A stretch of 64,000 bases of DNA from positions 176,666-240,665 of the forward strand of contig NIVC01001761.1 in NCBI GenBank assembly GCA_002269645.1, read 5' to 3'. A program made the position numbers and the translations under genes. This document shows, one piece after another, positions 6,105 to 26,767 of the stretch (positions within the stretch are counted from its first letter, which is position 1; every line of letters begins with the position of its first letter). Under the pieces are notes generated by a model. That model was not told where the DNA came from. It made no database searches and worked only from the letters and a program-made list of their open reading frames with translations. This DNA comes from Macrostomum lignano. Lineage: Eukaryota.

Positions 6105-9100
6105 TCAGCCGCTGCATTCTCGCTGAGACGCGCCAGCGGCCGACATGGCAAACCGGTTGACCTCCTGGTAGAACTCCTGGCGCTCCTCCAGCAGCAGGCG
6201 GCGCTGAGACTCCAGGTGCTCGCGCTCCCTGTCCATCAGCGACTCCAGCTCATGGAAGTGGCGCAGCTTAGCTTCAATCTTCTTTGCCTGAGCCTCCACT
6301 AGAGAGCCCACCAGGCTCTTGATCCTGGACTCCTCAGCCTGTGCCAGCTGCTTGGCGCTTGCCGCCGCTGCGGCCAGGGCTGAGGCCGGCTCAGCCTTCT
6401 TGGCCTCTTCATCCGCTGCCTCTCTGGGACTCATGGCGGGATCTGCTGCCACCTTGGGACTCTTGGCGGGATCCGCTGCCGCCTTGGGACTCTTGGCGGG
6501 ATCTGCTGCCGCCTTGGGACTCTTGGCGGGATCCGCTGCCGCTTTGGGACTCTTGGCGGTATCTGCTGCCGCCTTGGGACTCTTGGCGGGATCCGCTGCC
6601 TCTTTGGGACTCTTGGCGGGATCTGCTGCCGCCTTGGGACTCTTGGCGGGATCCGCTGCCTCTTTGGGACTCTTGGTGGGATCCGCTGAATCCTTGGGAC
6701 TCTTGGCGGGATCCGCTGCCTCTTTGGGACTCTTGGCGGGATCCGCTGCCTCTTTGTCGCCGACGCTCTGCTGGTGAGCCTTGAGCACGCAGCTGGGAAT
6801 CTCGTCCCTCATCTTGGCGTACTCGTCCAGAGCAGCCTTGGTGGCGGCGCTGGCAATCCTGGGATCAACAGTGGCAGCCAGGAAGGCCACGGTGCACATG
6901 ATGGGGTTGCCGGCCTTGCTGAAGGGAATCGGCTGGTGGATCAGCGGGCCCAGCGCCTCTTCGGCGCCCTCTAAAAACGGATCCTCGATCGGCAGCTTCA
7001 GGAAGTGCAGCACGCACTCCTCCTGGGTGCGGGACCCCACGTGCTCGGCCACTCGGTTCCAGTCGTCTTTGAATAGCTCAAGGCCCTCCAGCAGGCTCAG
7101 CGTCTCCTGGTCAGTCCAGTCCGACTTGCGGCTGGCCGGCGGCTTGTCCGGCAGCTTCGAGCTCGCCTCGGACTTCTGGATGTCGCTAGCGGCGTCCTTT
7201 GAGCTGTCCTTGGCAGACGGATGAGCGGCGCCGTTCACTTTTTCGCTGGCGCCGGACGGCGGCGCGGGTTTCAGCGGCGCCAGACAAGCCGGGCTGTCCG
7301 ATAGGGCGCGGAAATTCGACGCAGATGGCGGGCCAAGAGCGGCGAGCTTGGACTCCTTGTCCACCTGTCGGTGTCCATGCAGGGGTGAACGAGGTGGATG
7401 CAGTGAGTCACGCGAGCTACGATGAGCTTACGGCTGAGGGAAACCCCGGACTAAGACTCAAACTCCTACTGTGGGGTCGAACAAAGACTCAAACGCCTAC
7501 TGTGGGGTCGGACAAAGACTCAAACTCTACTGTTGGGTCGGATAAAAACTCAAACTCTACTGTTGGGCCGGACAAAGACTCAAGCTCTACTGTGGGGTCG
7601 GACAAAGACTCAAACTCTACTGTGGGGTCGGACAAAGACTCAAACTCTACTGTTGGGTCGGATAAAAACTCAAACTCTACTGTTGGGTCGGACAAAGACT
7701 CAAGCTTTACTGTGGGGTCGGACAAAGACTCAAACTCTACTGTGGGGTCGGACAAAGACTGAAACTCTACTGTGGGGTCAGACAAAGACTCAAACTCTAC
7801 TATAGGTCAGACAAAGACTCAAACCCTACTGTGGGGTTTAGACAAAGACTCAAACTCTACTGTGGGGTTGGACAAAGACTCAAACTCTACTGTTGGGTCG
7901 GATAAAAACTCAAACTCTACTGTTGGGTCGGACAAAGACTCAAGCTTTACTGTGGGGTCGGACAAAGACTCAAACTCTACTGTGGGGTCGGACAAAGACT
8001 TAAACTCTACTGTGGGGTCGGACAAAGACTCAAACTCTACTGTGGGGTCGGACAAAGACTCAAACTCTACTGTGGGGTCAGACAAAGACTCAAACTCTAC
8101 TGTGGGGTTTAGACAAAGACTCAAACTCAAAGCAAAAACTCAAGTCCAGCCTCACCTGATAGTTGATGAGGCCCCACTGTTCCAGGAAAGCGTGCACCCT
8201 GAGGATGCCGCACACGTCGCCATGCAAATTCCGCCTGCAGGCAGTGAAGGTGAGGTACTCCTGCGGGTTGAGCCTGTAGGTGTCAATCATGAAGTTGCGG
8301 CAGGCCAGGTAGGCCTCAGGAGTTTTGGTCGGTCGGCCTTCGAGGAAGAACTCCGGAAGGCTGCGCCTCTCCAGCGCGTGGATGGAGTTGTAGTCGAACC
8401 AGGTGGCGTAGGAGGGCACGATGATGGCGTGCGCCTGCTCAGTCACCGTCACGTCGTCTGCTGCCGCTTTCTGCAGTTTAGAGCGCGTATTCAATGAAGC
8501 TAATTAATGCTGGGAATCCAATTCTTGGGATTCGTAATGAATGTTAAGAAATAATTGGCCTAAGAATTGAACTGTATGGTGGGATAACTGTTTATTTGAA
8601 TCGGATGCTGGAAATTATCTGTTGATATTCGAATTGGATGACGGGAATTCCTCTGATGGAATTTGGATTGGATGCCGGGAATTCGCAAGGATCAGATTGG
8701 ATGCCGGGAATTCCCCTGCTAAATTCAGATTGGATGCCGGGAATTCCCCTGCTGGATTCAGATTGGATGCCGGGAATTCCCCTGCTGGAATCAGATTGGA
8801 TGCCGGGAATTCCCTTGCTAGAATCGGATTGGATGCCGGGAATTCCCCTGCTGGAATCGGATTGGATGCCGGGAATTCCCCTGCTGGAATCAGATTGGAT
8901 GCCGGGAATTCCCCTGCTGGAATCGGATTGGATGCCGGGAATTCCCCTGCTGGAATCGGATTGGATGTCGGGAATTACCCTGCTGGAATCGGATTGGATG
9001 CCGGGAATTCCCCTGCTGGAATCGGACTGGATGCCGGGAATTCCCCTGCTGGAATCGGATTGGATGCCGGGAATTCCCCTGCTGGAATCGGACTGGATGC

Positions 9101-9472
9101 CGGGAATTCCCCTGCTGGAATCGGATTGGATGCCGGGAATTCCTTTGTTGAGAGTCGGATCCAATTAACAACCAATCAGGAATTCACCTGTCCATTAAAA
9201 TCGTCCTGATCGCCATTCCCGCTGTCCCTGTCGCTGCCTGCGCTCCCAGCCGAAGTGCCACCAGCGGCCTCGGCTGCAGCTCCATCGCTGCTGCAGCTGC
9301 GAGAGTCAGCTTCCTCCAGCCGCTGAATCAGCTGGCGAGTCCTCTTGTTCTCACTTCTGGTCAGCAGTTTCCGACTGCTCAAATCTGAGGCTCTGGCTGC
9401 CCCATTCAATGCAGCAGACGGGGCTGGCGATTTCTCGGGCGATGGGGATCTGGCTCGCTTGTGAAGCTTCAT
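6105..9472 (-). CDS. SMARCC1/SMARCC2: SMARCC/SWI3-family subunit, short paralogue (copy A): SWIRM + SANT + KSP repeats + coiled coil, ~619 aa
   Basis: Exons 9188-9472 ([12 protein letters not shown]...), 8156-8470 ([19 protein letters not shown]...[52 protein letters not shown]) and 6105-7364 ([53 protein letters not shown]; [10 protein letters not shown]; [14 protein letters not shown], coiled coil). All introns are phase 0 and the spliced ORF is open. Confidence 0.9.
6420..6752 (-). repeat. Coding 30-bp tandem repeat ([10 protein letters not shown])x11 in SMARCC copy A
   Basis: Unit GGGACTCTTGGCGGGATCYGCTGCCKCYTT on the plus strand, in frame within exon 3. Confidence 0.95.
7450..8130. repeat. 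30-bp minisatellite in SMARCC copy A intron 2
   Basis: Unit GACAAAGACTCAAACTCTACTGTGGGGTCG. The same unit occurs at 23075-23245. Confidence 0.95.
8690..9145. repeat. 33-bp minisatellite in SMARCC copy A intron 1
   Basis: Unit GGATTGGATGCCGGGAATTCCCCTGCTGGAATC. Confidence 0.95.
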
Positions 9473-9669
9473 CTGGCTGCAGCATTGGGTGAGGATGTGG
9501 TTTGTATGGCTCCAACAAATACAGACAAAACAGACAGAGTAAGATTAGTTATAGTATCTTCAAGTATATGGTGTGTTTGCTCTTGAAGTCAAAATATACT
9601 AAGCAAAAAGCTATCCAAATTTACCCATGCTCAAATCAGTCATTCGCAGATTTTCTTTGACAACAGTAG

Positions 9670-10380
9670 GAGTTATGTGCCCTCTGCCGCAGGAATTTCC
9701 GTGGGAAAACCACGGGCCTACAGTGTGTGAACATAGGAGCCTATGTAAATGCATTGGTGCGCTCTGCCACAGGAATTACCATGAAAAAGCCATGGGCCCG
9801 CATCGGGCGGGCGCCTATGTGGGAGAACTCTGCAGAGAAAGCCATGGAAATAGCGTGGGGCCTAATGAGAGAACATAGCCGCTGTTGTTTTAATACATGC
9901 CATGGACTCTGCTCCTGGACTCAAAGTACATTGTTTTAAGCCGACAATACACGTTTGTAAATTGCAGTAAGTTTTCCTAAGTTTGAAAAATCTCACTTCC
10001 ATGCCTCTCATCTCAACAAGAGTTCCCTAAACATTTGTGTGCTGACTATACGATCATTCCATTGAAACAAAAATAAAATCGTAGCAATTTGGCTGCGTAA
10101 AATGTGTCCTGTAGGAAGTTTTGATTTTTTAATAAACATTTCAGTGAGAGTCTTTTTAGATGGTGACTGCGTTTGGTCATGGGTGCCTCTGCACTTGAGT
10201 AAATTGGACTGAATGTTTTGTGAAAGTGAACTTTTAAAGCGCCGTTTATTGCTTTGTTTTTGTTGATATTGCTGGTTTTTATTGAATTCGGCGGCGGGAG
10301 AGTGGGGTGGCGGTCTTTAAAACTAACTGGTACACTGGGCGGGGAATGTTATCAGTTTTATTACTTTTGTTCAATAACGA
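9670..10380 (+). repeat. Dispersed repeat, copy 1 (homologous to 41025-41610)
   Basis: Shares CTCTGCCGCAGGAATTTCCGTGGGAAAACCACGGGCCTA and ACTGAATGTTTTGTGAAAGTGA...AAAGCGCC blocks with the second copy. Confidence 0.75.
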
Positions 10381-10421
10381 TAAGAAAATAATTAGTGTAT
10401 ACACATATGTAACGTGTAAAC

Positions 10422-11079
10422 TAGGGGTCACTGAAACTAGGGCTTTTTCCGGGATCCCGGGATTCACAGGGTCGGGATTCAATCCCGGAAAGTTTATGCT
10501 ATGTTTTTATTATGTCTGATATAATAGCATTTAGCAAGACAGTTAGGTAAAATATCGAACATGCATGCATCCATGTCCACTCTCCGCTGCCCACTTTGTA
10601 AAATCTTTGATGTTGAGTTCAGTCTTGTTTAAATAATTTAACCTTGATTTTAAATTTTGAACTCATCGTGCATGTCGTGACAACCTTGACAACGTGAATG
10701 CCCACTGCCCAGACAGTAGTAGGTTGTGATTGTGAATGTAATATATACATTCATATTGCTTTGCACAGTGATACATGTACATTACATAATCCAATATATG
10801 TCATACATAATATATATATGCATATTACAATATTGATATTGCGAGTAGTAACATACTACTATAATATTTAATATACTACGAGTATAATAACATCATTATT
10901 ATAATTTTATATATTACATTACCAGCCTAGCATTACCCCTTTAGCTCCTACCATAACTGTAAGCGTTATAAAAATGTCAGTCGCAGCATTTTTATGACAT
11001 TATAACTATGTTGTGACAAGGATGGTACTGGAAAATATAACTCCCGGGATGGACAGAATACGGGATTTTGTGACCCCTA
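10422..11079. mobile_element. Non-autonomous hAT-type MITE
   Basis: TIR TAGGGGTCAC...GTGACCCCTA, with a perfect 8-bp TSD GTGTAAAC at 10414-10421 and 11080-11087. Confidence 0.85.
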
Positions 11080-11699
11080 GTGTAAACATATCTGTGTGTG
11101 TGCATATGGGGCAAATTGCCTGGTGATTTGGATATAAGGAAGGACTGAAAACTTTCTATTGCCCCAATAAAGTCAGATTTTTTTAAACTCTACCGTTTGG
11201 AATTCTGTTGAAAAACAATAATGAGCAGGACACGTTGCCCATCCTATGTGCATGAGGTTTGCACAACCTGCAATATAAGCAGACTCGGTGGGTTCAAACC
11301 GTATGAGCACACTGCTCGTGAGACCTGCTGCATCACCCGCTGGCTGATCGATTGAACTGTTTACGGCTAGAAACCAATCAACAAGACATGGAAGCCACAC
11401 CGTCGTAAATTGGAACTCAGCTGAGGATCGGGAGCAAGCCCGCATCATCGCTTTGGAGGTGGCAGAGCAAGAAGAGGAATTTAGGGCTGCTGAGCGAATT
11501 CGAGAACCTGAGACCTCACTGAGTCAGGTGATCTCAAGTGAATGCGGTCGGCCATTGATGACGGTCACCACTGAGCTGCCTGCCGCCGCTGCTGCTTCTC
11601 AGCCGATCACCGCTGAGCTGCTCGTTGTCACGTCACGACAGATGAAGATTGTGCTGAGCTGCCCGAATTAGATACGGCGTTCCTTGAGGAGTTAAGTGT

Positions 11700-12050
11700 A
11701 GAAAAGACAATGTGACCGGGAAGAATGTTGCCGGGAAGAGGCCACCAGCTTCAGAAGACTCCGCACGGGCCACTCGTTGGAGCTCGCCAACTATGCGAAG
11801 CGCATCGGAAGATCCGAGGATAGTAACTGCCTGGAATGCGAATCGCAGGAGGAAAGTATCGAACACCTGATGAATTGCCCGGCGACCCGGAGGAAGAGAG
11901 AGGAGATGGACATCACATTTGGGAGCTTGCGGATCTTAACAACAAGGCCGAGAGGGCGCTCAACTTCTGGCGTTGGATTCGAGGCAGGAAGGCCGAAAGG
12001 CCAGCAGTAGTCTATGGGCCTTACACACACACATAACAGCAGCAGCAGGC
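11700..12050 (+). mobile_element. 3' fragment of a non-LTR retrotransposon
   Basis: RRLRTGHSLELANYAKRIGRSEDSNCLECESQEESIEHLMNCP is the RLRTGH + CxxC...HxxxxC zinc knuckle of LINE ORF2 C-termini. It is followed by a (CA)/(CAG) simple-repeat tail. Confidence 0.75.
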
Positions 12051-14399
12051 CGCCATCCCAGTAGCTATGTTGTGCTCGTGCGCTTGCCCTGCCAAAGTGC
12101 ACTCTGCCCCCCCCCCACGCGGCATACCGTATTTGTTTTGGCGTTATATGCTCAGCGGTGTAAGCCGCTTAGCTGCCATTGTGTTCTCTGTGCACTGGTT
12201 GGCTGAGCCGCCCTGTCTGGCCCTCGCCCCGGGCTGCTCCTCCCTCAGCTGCGCCGTGATTGGCTGCCCGCCCGTGTGTTTTCTGCGCTCTCCAACGCAG
12301 GCCCGGAACGACGACTACCGTTTTTGTAGACCGTCCCCCTACCACACAGACAACAAACAATAAACATTGACCGTCGGGTCTGCCAGCCGCGAACAGACTT
12401 CAGCTGCAATTAATTGACCGCACGCGCAAGGGCGAGCTGTACGTGAAGTAAGTCACTGCCTTGTCTCCTTCATTTCAGGGGCTGTAGCAGGGACAGTCCT
12501 GACGCCGACTAAGGGGGGACTTGGCCAGGTAGTCTGCCAGGGACCACCCTGTACTGTAAGCCCGCCAGCTCGTGCGCTTTGACGCCCTGCTGAAGTTGAT
12601 CGACATCACAGCGTCCACGCGTGTGCCGGCCACTTGGGTGCGTCCTGACGCCCCAGACTTAGGGTCCCGTGCGGACACTCGCGCCCTGACGCAGGCCAGC
12701 ACGGGCCCGCGTACTCTGACCCTCGTAGACACACCCTTCCTGAGAGTCGTGAGTACAACAGCTGGAAAGAATCTTGAGCAGGCTTGGACGATGATGATGC
12801 CAGAAAACTGTATTTCTGACATTCTCTGCGAGCTGGAATCTGGCCCTGCTCAACCATCAACGATGGATGCGGAAGCAATGGCGGGGGCAACAACGGGTGC
12901 GGCTGAGACGGCTTCTTCTGGATTGCAGCAGCAGCCTTCGTGTCTATTCAGCTCGTCCTTCCTAGCAGTGTTGTGGGGGCATACATGCGCAACAGTCGGC
13001 CGAGTCGGCCGATCCGGCCGACCGATTTGGCGGCCAACCATGGAAGTCGCAAAAATGCCCACGCGAAAAACACGAAGTAGTGGTACTAAGTAGCTGACAA
13101 GGCATTTTGGCTTTATAAGACAGTCATAGTTACTCCTGCCGTTTACCCAAAGTTGCGTTATTTGCGGTTTTTTACATGTAAGTCGCATTTTTGGCCAACA
13201 ACTACGTCGCATTTTTGTTAAAACTAAGTCGCACGGCCGACCGAATTTTGGAGGTCGCGCATGTATGTGTGGGGGAATACTTGGTTGACCTCGGGGGTAA
13301 CTTTTGAATCCGGCTTAGCAACTCATAATTTTGCATTTAATTTTTTTAATGGGTAGATTGCTAATTAGCGGTAATCATGGGTAAAAGATAATGTGCAATT
13401 TTAAATGTGTATTGTATATAGTTTGTAGCGTTTAATGTGTAGAAATTAACAGCTAGCTGAAAGACTAGGATATCTATCAAATGCAATATATGTAGCTTAT
13501 TACGAAATCAAGAAGTGCAGTGGCTATAGTTCAATTGCAGCTTTGAAACCAATTATCTGAAGCAATTACTGTTTCGAATTAGCTAATGGGATCTCTCATT
13601 ACAGGGATTATGTTCTCATACACTAAAGAGGTGTGAAATGGGGCATATCCTATCTAAAATGAGCATTGTGGTCTTTCGGCTGTAAACTTATAGGGTCGTA
13701 GTATGCTCTACCGTTTACGTGTTGTTTATTGTCGTTTCTGGGACCCCAAAAATTTTTGCAAGCTGAAAGTAAATGCAAGTTATTCTATGCATAATTTTCA
13801 ATTATCTATCAAGCAATTTTGTTCAAAGCTTTGTGTTTCTATTTGTTTTCACTAATTTTTATAATTTCTTTTAAAATAAAAAGCTCGTAATACGAGCATA
13901 TAACGGCTTTGAAGGCTGATGAAAAAACATGCCAGACTTGATTTTCAATCATTTCCATCGAACTGACTACTGTCTGATGGAGGATTCGGTTCGGGAACCC
14001 ACAGGACAGGGCTCGCTGCTAGAGTCCGCCGATTTCAGTGTTGAACCTGGGACCAACAGTGAGTTAGATTAACTATAAAGTTTGCGAATTCTTTGAATAA
14101 TAGATTACAAATCTGAGAAATCCCCACAAATAATCAGACAGATGATTCATTTAAATGAAACGCCCAAGTTGAGTAAATCTATGAGCAAATTTCAAACTGT
14201 TGGGATTCTCAAGCTCCGATCCACTGATTACCGATATGCCAATTTCCATAGCTATCTGAATCATATCAAAACGCCATGGGATTTGCTTCTTAAAAGGACA
14301 GTACATTTTAAAAATTTAAAACTGAAAATTTAAAATTGGCTTTGTTCAAAAATATTTAGTACACTTTGCTTTAAATTCTATACCATATTTTATTTCCTC

Positions 14400-16694
14400 A
14401 TCCGTCTATCAGGAATCCCATTCCGATCTGCAATCGTATCAACAGCGCACAACAATCTCTTTCAAGTGCTGCGCTTTATTCCGACTGTGCCATGCGATCC
14501 GTTTGAATTGCTTCGTGAGACCAAAGACGCCATTGGACAGGTGCTTGAATTGCGACTCGACTCTTCTGATGGCCAGTCTGTTTGCGCACAACTCAAGCTC
14601 AACTTTCGCATGACTAGACTAGCTGGAACGGATGTATTGCCTATTAACGCTGAAAATAAGTACATCACACACCACCTGGTATGTCTTAATGGCATATGCG
14701 AGTTTAAGAACTGGTGGATGCAGAAATTTGCTGAGCTTGAGCGCAAAATTGACGTTTACAATTCTAATGGCAGTGGGTGGGTTGTTGATGGTCTCAACCA
14801 CGTCGATCTGTGCAGTGCCTTGTCCGACTGCATTCGATACTATTCAGGTAGATGCAGTGAATTTTCCTTGCCTATTGAGCTACTAAATAAAAAGGCTCTC
14901 ATTAATCCACCGAGTAATGGAAATGACTGTTTCCGCTTTGCCTGCTCGGCTTATCTTCATTGTGATGATCCCACCGTGAAGAAGTCGGGTCACAGATTGT
15001 CGACTTAAAAACTGGGAGGCGGAAATCGATTTGACAGGTATTAATCTGCCAGTCTCAATAAGTGACCTAGAAGCGATTGAGCAGAGAAACAAAGAAATTC
15101 GTTTCATGGTTCTAACATGGAAGAATTCGGAGCCTTCAGTGATCCGCCAACCCAGGGCACAATTGGCAACATCTCGGAAGATTGTGCTACTCATGTTGGT
15201 GCAGTCAACATTGTCTCACAGGGACTCAGAAGATAGCAGTGAAGAGGATGACAAGCAGGAAAATGATGGGATCGACACCAACAATCTTGCCCACTGGTGT
15301 GCGGTGTCAAGCCTCGATTGGTTGTTCGACAGCAAAGGGGGTTTTCGAAATCGAAAGTGGTGTGAACGATGCTTGAATTATTTTCGAACCGAAAAAGATC
15401 TACAATCACACCAAGTGCATTGCAATCTCCAACATTCGATCTCCATTAAGGAGATTATGCCTGAGTCAGAAAGTTCCTGCCTGCACTTCAAGTCCAGGGA
15501 GACGACACTGAGCCCTCCTTTTGTCGTCTACGCCGACTTTGAAGTACTCAACGTTCCAACTACTGCTGTAGATGATGCATCAATCACAAAGCTAACAGAG
15601 CACGTGCCAGCTGCTGCAGGCTACATCACAATCTCCTGAGAGGGAATTAGCCAGTTGCGTAGGCCTTGCGAGGATGTAGCTCTGTTTTGCAGTTCTGATG
15701 CACACGCATGCGTCAAGGAATTTTTTGTCTCTGGAGCAGTTGGCTCGAAAAGTTTATGACTGAAACAAGGAGTTCAGTCATAAGCCAGCCGTTAAACATG
15801 AATCAGACATTAGAAAATTAAATGAGGCTGTTTGCTGCCACTATTGTGAAGAAAGTATTCTCTCTTCTAGTGAGAAACACTGGGACCACAATCACTTGAC
15901 TGGTGCATTCCGTGGTGCTGCCTGTAGTTCATGCAACAAACTCGCCAGACTAAAGCGCCACTTTCTACCAGTTGTTCTACACAACTTGCGTGGCAATGAT
16001 CTGCACCTCATCTTCTCAACCGCCCTTGGTGATATGCCTGGCTGGAAAATCAGCATCATCCCGCAAATAGCCAAGGCATACCTATCAATGCAGGTTGAAA
16101 TTGATGAATATGAAAAGGATAGTAAGATAAGGCCACTAAACTTCACGCTTCCGTTTATCGACAGCTGGCAGTTTTTACACAGTAGCATTGCACAACTAAT
16201 TGCAACTTTGCCGGAAGATGTGTGCATAGTGATGGCTCAAATGCGTGAGCATTTCCCAAACGTAAGCCATGAAGTCCTTTTTTCAAAGGGAGTATTCCCA
16301 TACAAATATCTTTCTAATAGTCATGTACTCAGTGATACACAACTTGCCTAGCTGAGAGCAATTTTTCAATTGATTGAACAACTGCAAATGCAGCATACCA
16401 GAGTATAAGCATGCTCAAAAAACATGGCGTGAATTTGATGCGGTTAACTAGCGTCATTATATGCTCTGCTACCTTGAGTTGGATATCCGTCAACTTGCGG
16501 ATATTTTTGAGAATTTCCGCCGGCTCAGCCTCCCAGAAGATGGACTAGATCTGGTCCATTTTGTATTAACACCTGGGCTTTCATTTGCTTCCACCCTAAA
16601 GTCACTTTGTGGCATTGCGAAGGAAGGCATTCAGCTTTTGAGTGACAACAAAATGGATCAAACCTTTGAGCAAGGCATTTGTGGTGGCATGTGA
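14400..16694 (+). pseudogene. Decayed protein-primed DNA polymerase B of a Polinton/Maverick (adintovirus-like) element
   Basis: Motifs occur in the expected order over four frames: NGSGWVVD, LPIELLNKKALINP...DCFRF, C2H2 WCERCLNYF...HQVHC, Exo-I PFVVYADFE, endonuclease-VII-like CHYC...DHNHLTGAFRGAACSSCN, Exo-II PVVLHNLRGNDLHL, FIDSWQFL, SKGVFPYKYL, YLELDIRQLADIFENFR, LTPGLSF, FEQGICGG. There are several stops and frameshifts, and the sequence ends before the polymerase catalytic motifs. Confidence 0.85.
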
Positions 16695-19600
16695 TTTGTC
16701 AATATTCATCATGTGTAGGCATTTCAATCATGTTTTTACCTAGGCAACCTGCCCAAAATACATATTTATCTAAATTCTACTATACAAGCATAGCTAGTCA
16801 TTGGTCAATTTAATCTAGCCCATTTGCAATATAATGTGTGTGTAGCTTAGTATTTGTATAGACAAAATGCCATTTTGTAGGTTGGAATGATTTAAATTTA
16901 GATAGCAAAGTATGAAAATAATAGCCTGTAATTAGCCCTGCTATTGCACCAATAATTGAGGGGTTTTGTTTCCTTTAGACTTCATATGAAAAAGCAAATG
17001 CATAATATTCATCTAACACTTAGGCCTTATATAGCAAAAAACTAAAATTAAAAGGCTATACCAAAATGGTTCTATTATCTATTAAAATGCTCTAGCTTTC
17101 TAAATAGGCCTACCTTGAAAAAAACATAAGTAGATAGTAGACATTAAAAAAGTGGCAAACAACAAAAAACAAACTTGCAAGAATTTTTTGCTAGGAAATA
17201 GAAATATTTTTACTTATCAAAAAAAACATTGAATATAGTTCATTCTTATTTAGGCATAGGCTAGTTTAGTTTTATAATTTTATAATATTTGCAATACTAG
17301 GGCCTAATAGGTCCTATTTTTCTAATATATTTTGTAAAATTTAAGCCTTTTTAAGGATTTAGGAGCCTATTTAATTTTTTGGCATTAATAGGCCAAGTCC
17401 AAAAAATGATAAGAAAAAACTTGAGGCCTCTTTCAAACTTCAAATTAGGCCTAGGCTAGACTATTTTATGACTAAATAAGTAAACTTGGGCCTAGTTGTC
17501 TAATTACCATAGTCAGGAAAGTGGCAGTGTGCACAGGAATAAATTTTAGAGGGACAATCTGTGCACCATCTATGCGCCGTTATTCAAAAATTGAATAATT
17601 ACAAATGCATGCCAAAAAAATTGGTGCATGTCCATTCTCAAAAATACGCCAGTGTTGCAACAATAAATGACCTTTTTTACATTGTGACAATAAAAGACCT
17701 TTTTTAAATTGCATAGCAGACCCTTATTATTAGATAATTTTGTTGCTTTTAAAGCTTTTTTGGCGATACTATTTATAGCGAAAAGTTTATACACACAAAG
17801 ATTTGTTTAAATACTCTTTTACGAGCTGGAAAAAACTGGAAAGCTTGAAATTTGCACCTAAAAATGAACTTTTTTCATCTTTTTTCTACTTTACAATAAC
17901 TCTTACTTGTGATTCTATAAAGTGCACGCCAGGTGTGCACACATACTTTTTTTTCAAGAGTGATGCACGCCAACTATGCATGCCTAATTTTGGCGTGCAA
18001 GGCCAATGCACGCCCAAATTTTCGGGCGTATACTATATGATCCAGAGTGTGGGTGTGCCAATGTGCACTGAGACCCTTTGTGTGCACCGCGCTTGTGCGC
18101 CAATGTGCACTGAGACCCTTTGTGTGTGCCGCGCTTGTGCGCCAATGTGCACCAAGACCCTTTGTGTGCGCAGGAATTTTTCCCCTTAGAGGCCACCTTC
18201 CTGACTATGGCCTAATTAGAATTATAGCCTAGGCTTATAATATTTACAAGGTTTAAGGTCTAGGGTCTACATATAGATATAGGCTATTATTTTGTGATTG
18301 TCAGTTGAGGTGGCCCCAAAAAGGGCTGCTTTAGTGAAAGCAATGCCATTCTATAATAGTTTATTTGATGTCATTTTCTGCCATTTAGATGGTCTTATAC
18401 TCTAATGTCTGCTTATAGTAATTCTTATAATAATGCTTAGTAAGCATATATGTAATGCTCAATAATGCATAGTAATGCTTATATGTTTTTCGTCTTCATC
18501 ATTTGATCCTAGGACTATGTCATCTTCATTAAGCCTAGGCCTAATTGTCACAGTTTAGTTAGTATATTGTGATATATGCCATCAATTTACCATTTAGTCA
18601 AGTATTCTTTTGGCAATAAACTAGGCCCTAAACCAATAGTAAAAGACAAGGCCAAATCCAAATATCTCCTAAATTAAAAAAATGTAGGAATAATATAGTA
18701 TAGGCCTATTAGAGCTATCCTAGGCATAGGGCCTCTAGAGAACTTATTTCGTCATATAAAACTATATTAGGGCCCTACTATTATATTATAAAGATAATTT
18801 CAACTTTAGCTTGATATTTCAATGTGTAATAAAAGAGGAAAACATAATACTTATAATTATAATTTATAATTAAATTATAGAATATAGGCCCTAATTTAAA
18901 AAAATATTATAACTAGGAGCTAGGACTAGGCATAGTAGCTAGGCCCTAGCCTATGCCTAGAGGCTAGGGCGCCTATGGATAAAATTTGTAAAAATCTATG
19001 CATTTAATTAATAAGTACGGCCTACATTATTAGAGTATGATGCTGCAGCTGATCAAATTATCTAGATTGTGACAATTTCCCAGATTTAATCTAACCTTTT
19101 TGTTAAAGCCCAGATTAGCTAATATCAGGATCAACAACACATCATAGACACACGACACTCGCTCGCGCCACTAAAGCTAAAGGTGGCCGACTTGCGGCCG
19201 ACGGCCGGCGGCTTGTCCGTTGTCCGGCTGCTTCGAGCTCGGACTTACTGGCGGTTTCTATTTTTTGGAAACTTGAGTTCGCGCCACACTACGAGTAAGG
19301 TCTATAACTCAGTATATAATTTTTCGAAGGTAGGCAAAGCAGACAGCCACATAGCATTGCAAAAAACATAGCAATATTTTTGAAAAACGTACCAAGAACT
19401 TGATAAAGACAGATTTGATAGTTAGAATCGTCACTTACACTTGCTCCACACTAGGGGATAATTTTCTTTTACAGATATCGTTCGAGAGCCTCAGCTCCTG
19501 TCAATGACTCAAGGATGTTTTAAAACTTGAAAAAAGATATTGATTAAATGATTCCAGAAGGGAGCAATTATTTCATGCAGATATGCTTTTGCGCAGCTGA

Positions 19601-20899
19601 CTATAATTTCGGAATACATGTACATGTACATTCGCGGTACGCCAGAGGCAAAGTAAACTTCCGCCAAAATACAGGCCCGCTCCCTCCGGCCCCCATTTTG
19701 GTCTTGACCCACGATCCCTCACCGGTTTTTGGTTGGCACCACCGAAGACTCGATTAGCACACTTCCTCTTCTTAGGGCACTTCTGAAGTTAAGATCGAAT
19801 CAATAGAGATAAAAATTTGGTCGGAAATTGGTGGTAGCGTGATCTGGCACATCACAGGGGCTGTTAATGAGCGTGCGATATATGTACATGTATACATCAA
19901 TAGGCCGTATCATGTAGCCCATAGCCTTTAACTAACCGCGGCCTCTCATATGAGTCCACGACCACGGCATGCAGTCGTCCATCACCCAATAATCTGCATA
20001 GAAGCCATGGATACTGGTAAAAAGGCAAAACGAGTTAAGTAACAGGATCGGAACCTAAAGGCACAGTCCTTGCATGTAATAATATACAGGTGCATCATTA
20101 CTGCAATCCCAAATGCGTATCCAAGCACAAGATCTTCTCCTGTTTGCAGTCTTCTTTGTAGCTCATATAGTTTTTAGCCAATAGATACAAAAAAGCAAAC
20201 AGCAGAAAAGACAGCCACCCGCCATGTACGCACTGATGAGAATTCGACTAATACAAATAGGTTAATAACGGCAATTTATTAATAACATTTATAACAGTAA
20301 TAATGCATAAATTACTAAAATTAGACATCGGGATGACGGACAGCGAATGATTAAGCTGCTTTACATTTTAAAAAATCAGTGCATGCAACACTCTTACGCT
20401 CGTGCGCTATAAAGATTTGTAGTTGAACTTACTGTATTGTAACTAGATTGCATAATAATAATAATATTATAACAAATACTAATAGAGCATTGGTAGCAGC
20501 GGCCGAACTTTACAACGGATACCAGGGGGGGGGGGGGGTCAGTAAGACTCGGAACCGGATTGCACTGCTGGGGATTCTATCGCCACGCCCAGATATACTA
20601 AACAAGCACGGCAGACAAGCGCCACAGATACAGACGCAGAAGCAAACGATAAACAGTTGAATAAACAGCATTGAGAAACTATTAAATTTTTATAACATCA
20701 AACAATGAAAACGGCGATGCTGGTGGTGCAGGCAGAACGCGCTGGGTGCAACAAGGCCAGCCAGTGCCGGCAATACGATATGTACATTTGCACGGAGACA
20801 ACTCAGCACTGGGAATAATACGGCTAACAGATTATTCGGTTCAGAGTTTTGTTATCGAAATTCAAATTAAAGTTTCACAAGCCGAAAACGGGAAAGCCG

Positions 20900-23800
20900 C
20901 TACTGCGGCCCGGCCTGGTCCGTCTCCATTGGCTGCGGCCCCTCCGCCTGGGCAGCGGCAGGCGGCTGCTCTGGCGCCCTGTCCGGCACCGGGGGCATCT
21001 CCGAGTCCGAGGGCGCGGCGCCGCGCGCCTCTGAGGCCAACGAAGGCGGCGGAGGCGCCGCCGGCGACGTCACAGAATCGCCGGAGGGGGTCACCGAAGC
21101 GGCGGCCGGCGCAGACGCTGGGGCCTCGTCGAGGGCTGCGGACAGAGTCGGAGGAGCGGCGGCGGTTGACTCAGCGCCCTGAGGAGCTTCAACAGCCGGA
21201 CCGGCCGCAGCTCCGGCAGCCGAGGCGACACTCGAAGCCTGCGGGGCGGCCGGCAGTTGCGGCTGGGCGGACAGCGAAGGAGGCTGCGGAGTTGCCGGCT
21301 GCTGCGACGTCGGGGGCGGCGGCGGTGGCGGCGGAGGCATGGCGGAATCGGAAGTTGGCACAGTCGATGCCTGAGCAGTCTGCTCAGCCAATTGCTGCTG
21401 CTGCTGCTGCTGCTGGCGGACTTCTTGAGCGGCCAGCTGGCGAGCGCGCTGCTCGGCCACGCGGTTCATCTCTTGGTAGAAGGCCTGGCGCTCCTGCAGC
21501 AGCTGCTGTCGCTGGGCTTCCAGCACTTCCCGCTCTCGGTCCATCAGCGCCTCCAGCTCCTGGAAGTGGCGCAGTTTGGTTTCAATCTTCTTCATCTGGG
21601 TCTCCACCAGCGAGGCCACCAGGCTCTTGATCTTCTTCTCCTCCACCTGGGCCAGGTGCTTGGCTTTGACAGCAGCGGCGGCCAGAACGGACGCGGCAGC
21701 GGCGCTCATCGTCTCCTTGGGATCGGCCGGGGCTGCGGCGGCGGCAGCGGGCGGCTGGCCGCTGGTCTCATTGGCCGCGTCAGCCGGCTCCTTATCGCCG
21801 GCTTCGGTTGAGGCAACCTCAGCAGCAGCTGCGGAAGCAGCCGGAGGACTCTTGGGCTTGGCGGCTTCACCTGCAGCGGGATCAGTCGTCACCGGCTCGT
21901 CGCCATTCGTTTTCGCGGCGGCGGCGGCGACAGACTCAGAGGAAGCAGCGGCGGCCGGGGCACCGCCGGAGTCGTCGCCTTCCTTCTTGACAGAGGCGGC
22001 GTCGCCGGCGGACTCGGCGGATGCGACAGCAGCTGGTGGCGCAGCGTCAGCCGTGGCAGCCAGAGCAGCGGAAGCGGCGTCCTCGGAGGCAGCAGACTTG
22101 TCAGCAGCAGCAGCAGGCGGAGCTCCGTTGCCCAGCGAGCTGGTGGCGGCCGCGGAGGCCTCCTTGTTGGCGCCGACGCTCTGCTGGTGAGCCTTGAGCA
22201 CGCAGTTGGGAATCTCGTCCCTCATCTTGGCGTACTCGTCCAGAGCAGCCTTGGTGGCGGCGCTGGCAATCCTGGGATCAACAGTGGCAGCCAGGAAGGC
22301 CACGGTGCACATGATGGGGTTGCCGGCCTTGCTGAAGGGAATCGGCTGGTGGATCAGCGGGCCCAGCGCCTCTTCGGCGCCCTCTAAAAACGGATCCTCG
22401 ATCGGCAGCTTCAGGAAGTGCAGCACGCACTCCTCCTGGGTGCGGGACCCCACGTGCTCGGCCACTCGGTTCCAGTCATCTTTGAACAGCTCGAGGCCCT
22501 CCAGCAGGCTCAGCGTCTCCTGGTCAGTCCAGTCCGACTTGCGGCTGGCCGGCGGCTTGTCCGGCAGCTTCGAGCTCGCCTCGGACTTCTGTCCGGCGGC
22601 GGACTGCGCTGCCGACTGAGCCGACGGCGCCTGTTGCTGCTGCTGTTGCGACTGAATCGCCGCCGTGCCGCCGGGCACTCCGGTGCCGCTGCCCTGCTGG
22701 GAGTCGCCGCTGGCAGCTGCAGCAGACACCGCGGGACTGTCCGCAGCGGAAGCCGCAGATGAGACCCCATGACCGTTGGAGGTCACAGTCGCTGTTGTGG
22801 TTGTCGTAGAGGCTGCGGTTGAGGCGGGCACCGCGGCGGTGGCGGCGGCGGCTGATACTGAAGCTTCGCTGGTGACGACAGCGGTTCCGCCGTTGCCGCC
22901 GCCAACATTGAGGAAGGGCGGAGCGGGCTTGAATGGCGGGTTGACGGGCGCCAGTCCGGCCGGGGTGTCCGCCAGCACGTGGAAATGCGAGGTTGACGGC
23001 GGCCCCAGAGCGGCGAGCTTGGCTTCGTTGTCAACCTGGGAAATCGGCGAGCTTCTACTTGACAAGTGCGGATGGGGTCGGACAAAGACCTAAACTCTAC
23101 TGTGGGGCCGGACAAAGACTCAAACTCTACTGTGGGGCCGGAGAAAGACCTAAACTCTACTGTGGGGCCGGACAAAGACTCAAACTCTACTGTGGGGTCG
23201 GACAAAGAGTCAAACTCTACTGTGGGGTCTAACAAAGGCTCAAACGCAAGCCCAGACTCAAGTTCAGCCTCACCTGGTAGTTGATGAGGCCCCACTGTTC
23301 CAGGAAAGCGTGCACCCTGAGGATGCCGCACACGTCGCCATGCAAATTCCGCCTGCAGGCAGTGAAGGTGAGGTACTCCTGCGGGTTGAGCCTGTAGGTG
23401 TCAATCATGAAGTTGCGATAGGCCAGGTAGGCCTCAGGAGTTTTGCTCTGTTTGCCCTTGGTGAAGAACTCAGGCAGGCCGCGCTCCTCCAGCGCGTGGA
23501 TGGAGTTGTAGTCGAACCAGGTGGCGTAGGAGGGCACGATGATGACGTGCGCCTGCTCAGTCACCGTCACGTCACCGCCAGCGGCAGTCTGAAAATTTTA
23601 GGTTTAGGTTAGAGTTGGGGTTTAGGTTGGGGTTGGGGTTTAGGTTGGGGTTGGGGTTTAGGTTAGAGTGAAGTTTAGGTTAGAGTTGGGGTTTAGGTTA
23701 GAGCTGGGGTTAAGGTTGGGGTTGGGGTTTAGGTTGGGGTTGGGGTTTAGGTTAGAGTGAAGTTTAGGTTAGAGTTGGGGTTTAGGTTGGGGTTGAGGTT

Positions 23801-26767
23801 AGGGCTGGGGTTTAGGTTAGGTCTGGGGTTTAGGTTAGGGCTGGGGTTTAGGTTAGGTCTGGGGTTTAGGTTAGGTCTGGAGTTTAGCTTAGGGCTGGGG
23901 TTTAGGTTGGGGCTGGGGTTTAGGTTGGGGCTGGGGTTTAGGTTAGGGCTGGGGTTTAGGTTAGGGCTGGGGTTTAGGTTAGGGCTGGGGTTTAGGTTAG
24001 GGCTGGGGTTTAGGTTGGGGCTGGGGTTTAGGTTGGGGCTGGGGTTTAGGTTAGGGCTGGGTTTAGGTTAGGGCTGGGGTTGAGGTTGGGGCTGGGGTTT
24101 AGGTTAGGGTGAAGTTTAGGTTAGGGCTGGGGTTTAGGTTAGGGCTGGGGTTGAGGTTGGGGCTGGGGTTTAGGTTAGGGTGAAGTTTAGGTTAGCGCTG
24201 GGGTTTAGGTTAGGACTGGGGTTAAGGTTAGGGTTGGGGTTTACGTTAGGGCTGGGGTTTACGTTAGGGCTGGGGTTTAGCTTACGAACGGGGTTTATTT
24301 CTGAGATTGTGTCGGCAGTTGTTTGGTGCAGACCGAGTGTCCTCGGAAATTTGAAATTTCGAGCTTGTGAAAGAGGCCCAATGACTGCTTCATGTTGCCT
24401 CTGCCAGGTAAGCAACAGATCGGAAATTAATCCCACAGGCTGTCTGCACTACTACCAGTAGTGTGACCTCACCTGCCCGTGCTCATCCTCTCCGTCTTCG
24501 ACTTTGCCGCCACCGCCGCCCTCCGTGCCGCCGACCGTAGCGGCTGTGGCATCCGCGTCCTCATCGGCGCCGCCGCCAGCGCGGCCGGACCCGCCGCCGG
24601 GCGCCTCCGCGTCCATGGGCTCGCCGGAGGGCTGGCCGCCTGTCGCAGAAGCAGCAGCGGAGGCGCCCGTCTCCCGGCGCGCCTTCTTGCCGCCAGCGCC
24701 GCCGCCGGAAGCTGCCGCCGCCGCCGAGACGTTGGCAGCCGACGACTTCCGGCCGGAACCGGCGGTTCCGCCAACGCCGGAACGGGAATTCGACGAAGGC
24801 GTCGATGCAGCCACCGCCTGGGCGCCGGTTGACGAGGCTGGCGGCGAAGGCGATCGCTTTCGTTTCTGAATTTTCTTCTCCCGCTTGAGCTCCACGAACT
24901 CGGAAACCGAGTAGTAGCGCGGCGGCGCCGCTGGCTTGCGGCCGGTGCGCCGGGCGAACTCCTGGTACTCCACCAGGAAGTCCTCCTCCGGCGGGAACTC
25001 GCACTGCTCGTCCAGCGTCAGCAGGTAAGCGGCGTCCAGCTCCCAGGGACCGTCCGGGACGCAGCGGGTCACCTGGCGAAGGAGTGGGATTGATTAGGGA
25101 ATCTCAGTGTCTCAGGCAGAGGGAATCTCAGTGTCTGAGGCAGAGGGAATCTCAGTGTCTCAGGCAGAGGGAATCTCAGTGTCTCAGGCAGAGGGAATCT
25201 CAGTGTCTCAGGCAGAGGGAATCTCAGTGTCTGAGGTAGAGGGAATCTCAGTGTCTGAGGCAGAGGGAATCTCAGTGTCTCAGGCAGAGGGAATCTCAGT
25301 GTCTCAGGCAGAGGGAATCTCAGTGTCTGAGGCAGAGGGAATCTAGTGTCTCAGGCAGAGGGAATCTAGTGTCTCAGGCAGAGGGAATCTCAGTGTCTGA
25401 GGCAGAGGGAATCTAGTGTCTCAGGCAGAGGGAATCTAGTGTCTGAGGCAGAGGGAATCTAGTGTCTGAGGCAGAGGGAATCTAGTGTCTGAGGCAGAGG
25501 GAATCTAGTGTCTGAGGCAGAGGGAATCTCAGTGTCTGAGGCAGAGGGAATCTAGTGTCTGAGGCAGAGGGAATCTAGTGTCTGAGGCAGAGGGAATCTA
25601 GTGTCTGAGGCAGAGGGAATCTAGTGTCTCAGGCAGAGGGAATCTAGTGTCTCAGGCAGAGGGAATCTAGTGTCTAAGGCAGAGGGAATCTAGTGTCTCA
25701 GGTAGAGAGAATCTAGTGTCTCAGGTAGAGGGAATCTCAGTGTCTCAGGTAGAGGGAATCTCAGTGTCTCAGGTAGAGAGAATCTCATACACTGGGTGGA
25801 GAAGGAAATCTCATTCTGGGTGGAGAGAAAATCTCATATTGTTCAGAATGGAGAAGGAATCTCATATGCGGGATGGAGGGAATCTCATATTCTAGGTGGA
25901 GAGGGAATCTCATAGTCGGAACAGAGAGAGGAAATCTCATTCAGAAATGGAGAAGGAATCTCAAGTCCTTGCATAAAGAACGAATCGCAGATTAGAGAGG
26001 AAATGAGATGGGCGAATCTCTTTACCCAGAATCGCCTGAGCTGGAATTTATCCCATGCTGATTACCTCAACCTCCAGCTCAGCGGGGCTGGTGTAGAACA
26101 CATCATAGCTGGACACGGTGCCCTTCCAATGCACCACCGAGTGCTTGCCCTCCTTGAAGGCCGGGGTGACCTTGTCCTCGAGCAGCTGCTGGGCGGCGGC
26201 GGCCGGGGCAGCGCTGGCCGGGCCGTACACCAGGTGTGTGCATCCCTCCTCGGTGTCAGCCAGCTCGAGGCCGTGTCGCTGGCAGATGTCCAGCAGGCGA
26301 GTCCGGATGTCCTCGGGCACGTCCGATTTGATGTGCACCCGCGGCAGCGACCACAGCTTGGAGTCCAGCAGCTCCTTGCGCATCAGCGCCAGCATTTCCA
26401 GATTCTTCTCCAGCCAGGAGGCCTTGTGAAAGTCCAGCCTGCGCCAGCCCTGCTCGCCTTTGAAGCGGAACACAGTCAGGAAAATCTGGCAGAGCGCGCC
26501 GCCGGGCTGGAAGTCCAGGAACAGCCGGCCGGGCAGGCGGGTCGGATACGGCGGCGACTTTGCCTGGCGGCGGACCTGCTCCTCCTGGAAGCAGAGCAGC
26601 TGGTAGCAGATGGAGGCCAGGCTCTTGTTGGTTGGCGGCTCCGTCTGCATGAGTTTCTTGTGATTGCGGGTGAGCCAGGTGCGGACCGTGTCGAACTCGG
26701 CGATCACCTCCGGGTGCTCGAAGAACCGCTGACTGGGCGCGGTGTCCTTCTTGCGCTGCAGACTCAT
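20900..26767 (-). CDS. SMARCC1/SMARCC2: SMARCC/BAF155-170 (Moira) full-length subunit (copy B), ~1250 aa
   Basis: Exons 26066-26767 (MSLQRKKD...PPTNKSLA...[22 protein letters not shown]-terminal MarR-like/BRCT-like module), 24473-25072 (chromo-like segment, KRKRSPSP), 23274-23588 (SWIRM) and 20900-23035 (SANT, coiled coil [40 protein letters not shown]-rich tail). Introns are phase 0 GT-AG and the ORF is open. Confidence 0.95.
23075..23245. repeat. 30-bp minisatellite in the homologous intron of SMARCC copy B
   Basis: About 5-6 units of the 7450-8130 repeat. Confidence 0.9.
23600..24285. repeat. Telomere-like 18-bp G-rich array in SMARCC copy B intron 2
   Basis: Unit GGGGTTTAGGTTAGGGCT, containing TTAGGG/TTAGG variants. 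Confidence 0.9.
25095..25790. repeat. 22-24-bp minisatellite in SMARCC copy B intron 1
   Basis: Unit GGGAATCT(C)AGTGTCTSAGGCAGA. Confidence 0.95.

What the first reader, a model, noticed from the sequence alone, without database searches (positions are those of the whole stretch)
6105..26767. Tandem SMARCC paralogues: one canonical, one truncated Swi3-like variant with an intact ORF
Seen: both copies share the SWIRM exon (315 nt each, same intron phases), SANT and coiled coil. Copy A starts at [12 protein letters not shown], homologous to KRKRSPSP in exon 2 of copy B. It therefore lacks the whole N-terminal MarR/BRCT/chromo-like module and the Q/P-rich tail, yet splices into an open 619-aa frame. 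It also changes conserved residues (SWIRM YRNFM to CRNFM; [10 protein letters not shown] to [10 protein letters not shown]). Established: SMARCC proteins dimerise as the BAF scaffold, and fungal/plant SWI3 lack the animal N-terminal module. Inference: a lineage-specific BAF variant subunit, possibly tissue-, germline- or stem-cell-restricted.
Basis: partly seen in the sequence, partly recalled or inferred. Interest (0 to 1): 0.72.

Follow-up and report, generated by a model that had tools for sequence, protein, structure and literature searches.

The report
Truncated SMARCC duplicate beside canonical gene
The flatworm Macrostomum lignano carries, next to its normal SMARCC chromatin-remodelling scaffold gene, a shortened second copy that keeps only the core assembly domains, has RNA-based gene models and looks selectively maintained, so it is probably a lineage-specific variant subunit, but its function is untested.

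Summary
Two SMARCC genes lie head-to-tail on the minus strand. Copy B (26767-20900, 4 exons, 1250 aa) is canonical. Copy A (9472-6105, 3 exons, 619 aa) has SWIRM, SANT and coiled coil but lacks the N-terminal MarR/BRCT/chromo module and the Q/P tail. The organism is Macrostomum lignano.

Copy A is intact, with identical exon lengths, in two further scaffolds of assembly Mlig_3_7. Both carry RNA-seq-derived gene models whose 5' ends fall directly after AG acceptors flanking the ATG. That fits spliced-leader trans-splicing, and no N-terminal exons exist elsewhere in the window.

A and B form a mosaic. Unconverted blocks have dS 0.65-0.76 and omega 0.20-0.27. The 3' half of the SWIRM exon and the SANT tract are 99% identical, which indicates gene conversion. 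A has 22 lineage-specific changes at conserved sites against 4 in B.

Best reading: an old partial segmental duplicate that is expressed, evolves under relaxed purifying selection, and has an architecture like yeast Rsc8. Incorporation into BAF and tissue restriction are untested. The gene is already in databases as a hypothetical protein or SMARCC2, but I found no paper describing it. Moderate interest.

The parts
6105..9472 (-). Copy A, truncated SMARCC paralogue (3 exons, 619 aa)
   Evidence: Splice model. Pfam domains. 97-99% identical RNA-seq-derived models P0001 and P0121.
9188..9472 (-). A exon 1 (95 codons). The ATG aligns with an AAG (Lys) codon inside B exon 2. It encodes KRARSPSP plus a disordered linker.
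   Evidence: The peptide has no relative outside M. lignano.
9457..9482 (-). Two candidate SL trans-splice acceptors flanking the ATG: CTGCAG|CCAGATG (AG at 9478-9477) and CACAAG|CGAGCC (AG at 9459-9458)
   Evidence: The 5'-partial CDS of P0121 starts at CAG ATG and that of P0001 at CGA GCC. The SL acceptor motif [T/C]TNCAG and the SL ending in ATG come from PMC8629364. TBONE cuts transcripts at SL peaks (PMC5730564). Frames were checked.
8156..8470 (-). A SWIRM exon (315 nt). The 3' half (8299-8156) is nearly identical to B.
   Evidence: 24 mismatches in the first 171 nt and 1 in the last 144 nt; dS 0.16 for the whole exon.
7447..8128 (-). 30-nt minisatellite in A intron 2, shared with B intron 3
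   Evidence: Shared intron sequence shows a DNA-level duplication, not retroposition.
6754..7178 (-). SANT / SWIRM-assoc_3 tract of A, 98.8% identical to B 22167-22591 (gene-conversion tract)
   Evidence: dS 0.03, against 0.65-0.76 in flanking homologous blocks.
6411..6756 (-). Coding 30-nt x 11.5 minisatellite ([10 protein letters not shown] repeats), specific to A
   Evidence: Repeat composition differs between the window and L001 while total length is the same.
6144..6383 (-). A coiled coil (SWIRM-assoc_1), 78% nt identity to B
   Evidence: dS 0.65, dN 0.17, omega 0.27.
9473..20899 (.). 11.4 kb AT-richer spacer between B's stop and A's ATG. It holds decayed ORFs and no SMARCC N-terminal exons.
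   Evidence: GC 0.42. Collinear with L002.
20900..26767 (-). Copy B, canonical SMARCC (4 exons, 1250 aa)
   Evidence: 43% identity over 99% of residues 1-580 to Patella SMARCC2. Match to solved SMARCC structures.
22167..22591 (-). B counterpart of the SANT conversion tract
23073..23417 (-). B counterpart of the second near-identical tract (SWIRM 3' half, intron start and 30-nt minisatellite)

Best explanation
Copy A is an expressed, protein-coding, lineage-specific SMARCC paralogue of Macrostomum lignano.

Origin. It arose from an old partial tandem segmental duplication of the canonical gene (copy B). The duplicated segment ran from the middle of exon 2, at the KRKRSPSP motif, to just past the coiled coil. 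A Lys codon became the ATG, and a new stop lies 13 codons after the coiled coil.

How it gets a 5' end (inferred). The duplicate lacks the parent's 5' exons. Its mRNA 5' end is most probably made by spliced-leader trans-splicing at AG acceptors 4 nt upstream or 15 nt downstream of the ATG. At the downstream acceptor the leader's own terminal AUG is in frame. Either way the protein starts at the KR-x-RSPSP motif.

What the protein keeps. It retains the parts of SMARCC that build the BAF core. These are the SWIRM domain (each SWIRM binds one SMARCB1 repeat; the R487 equivalent is retained), SANT, SWIRM-assoc_3 and the dimerising coiled coil. It lacks the MarR/BRCT/chromo module and the Q/P tail. 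This is a yeast Rsc8-like architecture.

Evolution. Gene conversion from B keeps the SWIRM 3' half and the SANT tract almost identical to B. The remainder evolves about five times faster than B but still under purifying selection.

Function (inferred, not shown). A pairs with B or with itself and enters BAF-type complexes that lack one or both N-terminal modules.
For: Structure and domains.

Three intact copies. The window, L001 (NIVC01000736.1) and L002 (NIVC01000319.1) all have exon lengths 285/315/1260 with no indel or stop.

Transcription. Mlig_3_7 gene models are built from RNA-seq and cut at SL and poly(A) peaks (PMC5730564). Models P0001 and P0121 reproduce my splice junctions.

5' ends. 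Both models start directly after an AG. One of these sites is CTGCAG, which matches the published SL acceptor motif. The SL ends in ATG (PMC8629364).

No N-terminal exons elsewhere in the window.

Selection. Unconverted blocks give omega 0.20 (post-SWIRM) and 0.27 (coiled coil) at dS 0.76 and 0.65. Even if every replacement were on A's branch, omega_A would be at most about 0.4-0.5. In a substitution-only neutral simulation, 777 unconverted nt stay stop-free in only 0.2-9% of replicates at 0.3-0.1 substitutions per site. A's GC3 is 0.75, against 0.80 in B and 0.42 GC in the spacer.

Conversion. dS is 0.03 in the SANT tract. The last 144 nt of the SWIRM exon have 1 mismatch, against 24 in the first 171 nt.

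Age. A-B dS is 0.65-0.76, against 0.03-0.05 between L001 and L002.

Interface. SMARCB1 Rpt1 and Rpt2 each bind one SWIRM, and R487C impairs this (PMC7506551). A keeps that Arg.
Against: I saw no reads, so transcription and trans-splicing rest on deposited gene models and on where their 5' ends lie.

A has 22 lineage-specific departures at conserved columns against 4 in B (P = 5e-4). They include Y152C in the SWIRM domain and H217N/H219R in the invariant [10 protein letters not shown] motif. This pattern is also what early decay would look like.

The A-versus-A comparisons lose significance once converted tracts are removed (5 nonsynonymous to 4 synonymous differences, my count from the difference list).

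Conversion imports B's sequence and can mimic constraint.

At the CTGCAG acceptor the leader's AUG is out of frame and opens a 42-codon overlapping uORF.

No promoter was identified. No orthologue from another species was available. BAF incorporation is untested.
Confidence: 0.6

Rival explanations
1. A is a non-functional partial duplicate on its way to becoming a pseudogene. Its ORF persists by chance plus repeated gene conversion from B. Its transcripts are by-products, such as read-through or opportunistic trans-splicing at any exposed acceptor.
For: Replacement at conserved sites is five-fold faster in A (22 against 4) and touches invariant motifs. Conversion tracts cover about 570 nt of the most conserved coding sequence. 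Outside those tracts the three A copies differ by 5 nonsynonymous and 4 synonymous changes, which is not significantly different from neutral (my count). M. lignano is rich in recent duplicates (PMC5730564, PMC10468722).
Against: At dS of about 0.7 since duplication, unconverted blocks still show omega 0.20-0.27. No stop or indel occurs in 1860 nt in any of three copies. Neutral simulation gives 0.2-9% stop-free outcomes before indels are counted. GC3 remains coding-like. The ATG and both splice junctions are conserved, and gene models exist at two loci.
Confidence: 0.2
2. A's exons serve mainly as alternative 3' exons of B. Long B-to-A transcripts would splice B exon 2 to A's SWIRM exon, or B exon 1 to the AAG|CGAGCC acceptor, so the N-terminal module is supplied after all.
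For: Both genes are on the same strand and all junctions are phase 0. B e1-e2 joined to A e2-e3 reads open for 958 aa, and B e1 joined to A e1 at the alternative acceptor reads open for 848 aa. P0001's CDS is 5'-partial and begins exactly at that in-frame acceptor.
Against: Both deposited models begin at A exon 1, and no upstream exon is attached. B has its own stop and an AATAAA 620 nt downstream of it. The spacer is 11.4 kb of repeat-rich DNA. A exon 1 keeps an ATG and an open frame in all three copies, which a purely internal exon would not need. The CTGCAG acceptor is out of frame for cis-splicing from B (stop at codon 276).
Confidence: 0.1
3. A is functional but acts as an antagonist rather than a scaffold. 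It would dimerise with B or bind SMARCB1 and titrate them, giving complexes that cannot do what needs the N-terminal module or the tail.
For: A retains the dimerisation and SMARCB1-binding parts that conversion keeps matched to B. It has lost two whole regions and changed conserved residues.
Against: Nothing here separates this from the variant-scaffold reading. Yeast Rsc8 is a working scaffold whose SWIRM starts at residue 74 of 557, so an N-terminal module is not needed for scaffold function in general.
Confidence: 0.1

Closest known systems
Animal SMARCC (BAF155/BAF170, Drosophila Moira, planarian smarcc2)
   Same: SWIRM, SANT, SWIRM-assoc_3 and coiled coil in the same order. About 45-50% identity to vertebrate SMARCC2 over the shared part. 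The KR-x-RSPSP motif and the R487 equivalent are retained.
   Different: No MarR/BRCT/chromo module (PF16496 absent) and no Q/P-rich tail. 619 aa, against roughly 950-1250 aa. An A-specific decapeptide array. Substitutions at sites invariant in 8 outgroups.
Vertebrate SMARCC1/SMARCC2 paralogue pair
   Same: Two SMARCC paralogues in one genome that could pair in the BAF core.
   Different: Both vertebrate paralogues are full length and unlinked. Here one is truncated at both ends, sits in tandem with the other, and exchanges sequence with it by gene conversion.
Yeast Rsc8 / Swi3 (and, from my own knowledge, plant SWI3A/B)
   Same: A short N-terminus followed by SWIRM, SANT and coiled coil. In solved Rsc8 (557 aa) the SWIRM starts at residue 74, against about residue 105 in A.
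   Different: A is not an orthologue of these. It is a secondarily truncated animal SMARCC derived from copy B. The resemblance lies in architecture only.
SL trans-splicing supplying the 5' end of mRNAs in M. lignano (PMC8629364, PMC5730564)
   Same: The annotated 5' ends of A sit directly after AG acceptors, one of which matches [T/C]TNCAG. The leader ends in AUG.
   Different: Here it would give a 5' end to a duplicate that lost its parent's first exons. No SL-containing reads were inspected.

Membership tests
SMARCC / SWI3 family | SWIRM domain | tested here: met
   PF04433 in A at E 2.6e-27 and in B at E 8.5e-27. Matches solved SMARCC, Swi3 and Rsc8 SWIRM structures.
SMARCC / SWI3 family | SANT (Myb-like) domain following the SWIRM domain | tested here: met
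   PF00249 in A at E 1.5e-11 and in B at E 3.2e-11.
SMARCC / SWI3 family | C-terminal coiled coil (SWIRM-assoc_1) used for dimerisation | tested here: met
   PF16495 in A at E 1.6e-22 and in B at E 7.6e-26. Dimerisation itself was not tested.
Canonical animal SMARCC (BAF155/170 type) | N-terminal MarR-like/BRCT/chromo module (SWIRM-assoc_2) | tested here: not met
   Absent from A. No such exons occur anywhere else in the window. Present in B (E 2.1e-46; 6YXO/6YXP E 7e-49).
Canonical animal SMARCC (BAF155/170 type) | Pro/Gln-rich C-terminal tail | tested here: not met
   A ends 13 codons after the coiled coil, and its 3' flank has no similarity to B's tail. B has a 184-aa tail.
BAF/SWI-SNF core subunit | Physical incorporation into the complex (binding SMARCB1 repeats, pairing with a second SMARCC) | not testable with these tools
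   Only indirect evidence. The R487 equivalent and the whole SWIRM 3' half are identical to B. The interface role comes from PMC7506551.
SL trans-spliced gene of M. lignano | Mature mRNA starts at an AG acceptor carrying the 35-nt leader | tested here: inconclusive
   The CDS starts of two deposited models fall directly after CTGCAG and CACAAG. The annotation pipeline cuts at SL peaks. No reads were seen.
Processed (retroposed) duplicate | No introns and a poly(A) remnant | tested here: not met
   A keeps two introns at positions and phases homologous to B's, and shares an intronic minisatellite with B.

The most novel reading that the evidence does not exclude
SL trans-splicing rescued a 5'-truncated gene duplicate and so created a minimal, Rsc8-like SMARCC scaffold in an animal. 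Gene conversion keeps its SMARCB1-binding and SANT surfaces matched to the canonical partner, while the rest diverges. The A/B heterodimer or A/A homodimer then defines a distinct BAF assembly, possibly specific to neoblasts or germline, in a regenerating flatworm where transgenesis and RNAi are available.
Probability: 0.25. Interest if true: 0.6.

Novelty: new variant of a known kind. Interest (0 to 1): 0.4.

Why it matters
SMARCC dimers are the platform on which BAF complexes assemble, and what the animal-specific N-terminal MarR/BRCT/chromo module does is poorly understood. A naturally occurring, selectively maintained SMARCC without that module, sitting beside the canonical gene in an animal that allows transgenesis and RNAi, would be a ready-made experiment on that question. 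BAF controls neoblast differentiation in planarians (PMC10589948). The locus also shows how spliced-leader trans-splicing could let partial duplicates become genes without inheriting a first exon. It further shows conversion keeping interface domains alike in tandem paralogues. The limits are real: M. lignano is full of duplicates, the gene is already deposited (unnamed or named SMARCC2), and nothing yet shows a distinct function.

Tried and rejected
- Upstream N-terminal exons for A. tblastn with B residues 1-440 found only B's own exons. Rejected.
- Homology of A's 5' flank with B exon 2. DNA local alignment was no better than shuffles.
- Homology of A's 3' flank with B's tail. DNA local alignment was no better than shuffles.
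- Origin of A's decapeptide repeat from B's KPKSP segment. Only a 10-nt match, reached by 40 of 500 shuffles. Not shown.
- Expression class (neoblast or germline). Gene ids Mlig033952 and Mlig033098 were not found in full text. They were also absent from the held supplements of PMC5816591, PMC7336406 and PMC12896417, and PMC8629364 has no held supplements.
- Orthologues in other species. The third word-indexed search, with exon 1 plus the start of the SWIRM domain, returned nothing. The exhaustive search with exon 1 returned only an M. lignano A-type protein.
- A canonical B-type M. lignano protein is absent from the protein database, so the homeologous B loci could not be fetched.
- A guess that the ORF cluster at 14466-16694 encodes a protein-primed DNA polymerase was not supported by Pfam or PDB searches.
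- No SL RNA gene lies in the window.
- Retroposition was rejected because introns and an intronic minisatellite are shared.
Full report
**What is there.**
Both SMARCC-like genes lie on the minus strand. I read the junctions directly and translated the spliced models.

| Gene | Exons (window coordinates) | Exon lengths (nt) | Protein |
|---|---|---|---|
| Copy A | 9472-9188, 8470-8156, 7364-6105 | 285, 315, 1260 (with stop) | 619 aa |
| Copy B | 26767-26066, 25072-24473, 23588-23274, 23035-20900 | 702, 600, 315, 2136 (with stop) | 1250 aa |

All introns are GT-AG and phase 0.

Pfam finds SWIRM, Myb/SANT, SWIRM-assoc_3 and SWIRM-assoc_1 in both proteins. The N-terminal SWIRM-assoc_2 is found only in B. 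B residues 2-270 match the solved SMARCC1 N-terminal module (6YXO/6YXP, E 7e-49). In the same search B's QKRKRSPSP aligns with human KKRKRSPSP.

**Organism and other copies.**
The best database hits to A are Macrostomum lignano proteins. P0001 is BOX15_Mlig033952g17 (614 aa, 97% identity). Its cluster-mate P0121 is BOX15_Mlig033098g1 (620 aa). Several UniProt entries are named SMARCC2.

Their contigs were fetched as L001 (NIVC01000736.1) and L002 (NIVC01000319.1) and are collinear with the window. In both, the same 839-aa Vps41-like gene lies downstream. All three A copies have exon lengths 285/315/1260 with no indel and no stop.

M. lignano is a recent hidden polyploid, and its assembly holds 180 Mb of duplicated blocks at 95% identity or more (PMC5730564; PMC10468722). 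L001 and L002 differ by dS 0.03-0.05, which fits such copies. A therefore predates that duplication.

**Is A transcribed, and is the N-terminus really missing?**
Mlig_3_7 gene models are not ab initio predictions. They come from StringTie/TACO assemblies of RNA-seq plus a de novo transcriptome. The TBONE pipeline then cuts them at experimentally mapped SL trans-splice and poly(A) sites (PMC5730564). P0001 and P0121 are collinear with my spliced model, so the deposited models use the same junctions.

Both are flagged 5'-partial. P0121 starts QMKLHK, so its CDS begins at CAG ATG, one base after CTGCAG. P0001 starts RARSPSP, directly after CACAAG.

The published M. lignano SL acceptor motif is [T/C]TNCAG, and the 35-nt leader ends in ATG (PMC8629364).
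- At the AAG|CGAGCC site the leader's ATG is in frame and gives M-RARSPSP.
- At CTGCAG|CCAGATG it is out of frame. It opens a 42-codon overlapping uORF, and the genomic ATG four bases further on would be the start.

I infer, but did not see, that A's mRNA 5' end is made by SL trans-splicing. This would explain how a duplicate without the parent's first exons acquires a cap and leader.

tblastn with B's first 440 residues finds nothing else in the 64 kb window. The annotations of L001 and L002 show no same-strand gene within 10 kb upstream.

**How the duplicate was made.**
A's ATG aligns with an AAG (Lys) codon of B exon 2: [13 protein letters not shown] against [13 protein letters not shown]. 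Upstream of it there is no detectable similarity. Downstream of the coiled coil there is none either.

The introns flanking the SWIRM exon are at homologous positions. The 30-nt minisatellite of A intron 2 is shared with B intron 3. So this was a DNA-level partial tandem duplication running from mid exon 2 to just past the coiled coil. It was not retroposition. The two genes are separated by 11.4 kb of lower-GC, repeat-rich spacer.

**Mosaic divergence and gene conversion.**
Nei-Gojobori estimates by block:

| Block | Codons | dS | dN | omega |
|---|---|---|---|---|
| Post-SWIRM | 30 | 0.76 | 0.15 | 0.20 |
| Coiled coil | 77 | 0.65 | 0.17 | 0.27 |
| SWIRM exon | 105 | 0.16 | 0.064 | 0.41 |
| SANT tract | 139 | 0.03 | 0.003 | 0.10 |

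Within the SWIRM exon, 24 of the 25 mismatches lie in the first 171 nt and one lies in the last 144 nt. Similarity then continues into the intron. Synonymous sites are as alike as replacement sites in these tracts. The cause is therefore gene conversion (or later partial re-copying), not protein-level selection.

The two tracts are A 8299-8156 plus the intron start, and A 7178-6754. They cover the SWIRM half that carries the R487 equivalent, and the SANT/SWIRM-assoc_3 region.

**Selection on A.**
Eight outgroup SMARCC proteins were aligned with A and B. At the 290 columns where at least 7 of 8 outgroups agree, A has 22 private departures and B has 4 (binomial P = 5e-4). The A changes include Y152C (human Y465), H217N and H219R. 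A therefore evolves much faster than B.

It is still constrained. If every replacement in the unconverted blocks is assigned to A, and half of dS is assigned to each branch, omega_A is at most about 0.53 (coiled coil) and 0.41 (post-SWIRM).

A substitution-only neutral simulation of the 777 unconverted, non-repeat nucleotides gave these stop-free fractions:

| Substitutions per site | Stop-free replicates |
|---|---|
| 0.1 | 9% |
| 0.2 | 1.4% |
| 0.3 | 0.2% |

Indels were not modelled, and three copies are open. GC3 is 0.75, against 0.80 in B and 0.42 GC in the spacer.

Comparisons among the three A copies give omega 0.22-0.41, with P = 0.007 and 0.001 for two of the three pairs. Outside the converted tracts only 5 nonsynonymous and 4 synonymous differences remain (my count from the difference list). 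That test has no power on its own.

**Likely function.**
The following is established elsewhere. One SMARCB1 binds two SMARCC SWIRM domains through Rpt1 and Rpt2, and this heterotrimer is needed for BAF assembly (PMC7506551). Planarian smarcc2 is neoblast-enriched and essential (PMC10589948). Yeast Rsc8 is a working scaffold whose SWIRM begins at residue 74 of 557.

A keeps every part of that minimal architecture. I therefore consider it most likely that A enters BAF-type complexes as a partner of B or of itself, giving complexes that lack one or both N-terminal modules and tails. This step is inference.

The rivals are:
- neutral decay masked by conversion;
- use of A's exons as alternative 3' exons of B (B e1-e2 joined to A e2-e3 is in frame);
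- an antagonist role.

None of these is excluded.

**Novelty.**
The gene is in public databases as a hypothetical protein or as SMARCC2. I found no paper mentioning it or a truncated flatworm SMARCC. The exon-1 peptide has no relative outside M. lignano among 1.84 billion representative proteins. That library probably lacks other Macrostomum species, so 'lineage-specific' means only 'not seen elsewhere'.

It is a new architectural variant of a well-known family, in a genome rich in duplicates. Interest is moderate. It would rise if copy-specific expression or a distinct complex were shown.

Noticed in passing
window 5000-5615, 7447-8128, 8629-9143, 23073-23245, 23601-24284, 25096-25785: Introns and spacers are packed with long minisatellites with units of 18, 23, 29, 30 and 33 nt. 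The array at 5000-5615 lies in the window with the extreme GC skew (-0.58). Many spurious long ORFs are read-throughs of these arrays.
   Followed up: partly
window 6411-6756 (-): A 30-nt x 11.5 minisatellite lies inside copy A's coding exon and encodes [10 protein letters not shown] repeats with 11 SPK motifs. The order of unit variants differs between the window and L001, yet total length is identical. Its origin from B's KPKSP segment is not shown.
   Followed up: partly
window 14466-16694 (+): A cluster of four ORFs in different frames, conserved in L002 and partly in L001, has no convincing Pfam or PDB match. It may be a decayed mobile element. A weak zf-RVT-like remnant lies at 11777-12010 (E 0.004).
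   Followed up: partly
L001 2325-8943, relative to window 12418-10524: The L001 copy carries about 6.6 kb where the window has about 1.9 kb of unmatched sequence. The extra stretch contains a THAP-domain gene on the opposite strand.
   Followed up: no
window below about 3900 (-); L001 15093 onward; L002 15738-23142: The downstream neighbour of copy A, on the same strand about 2.2-2.5 kb away, is an 839-aa Vps41-like WD40/TPR gene. Whether it shares a transcriptional unit with A is unknown.
   Followed up: no
copy B, window 20900-26767: No M. lignano protein of the canonical B type was returned by the protein search. The best hit was a limpet SMARCC2 at 43% identity. The truncated A type has seven entries. 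The canonical gene may be missing from the deposited annotations.
   Followed up: partly
window 26753-26767 (-): B's start reads ATGAGTCTGCAG|CGCAAGAAGGAC. The CTGCAG matches the SL acceptor motif, and trans-splicing there would put the leader's ATG in frame as M-RKKD, close to the human N-terminus MAVRKKD. This is read from the sequence only.
   Followed up: no
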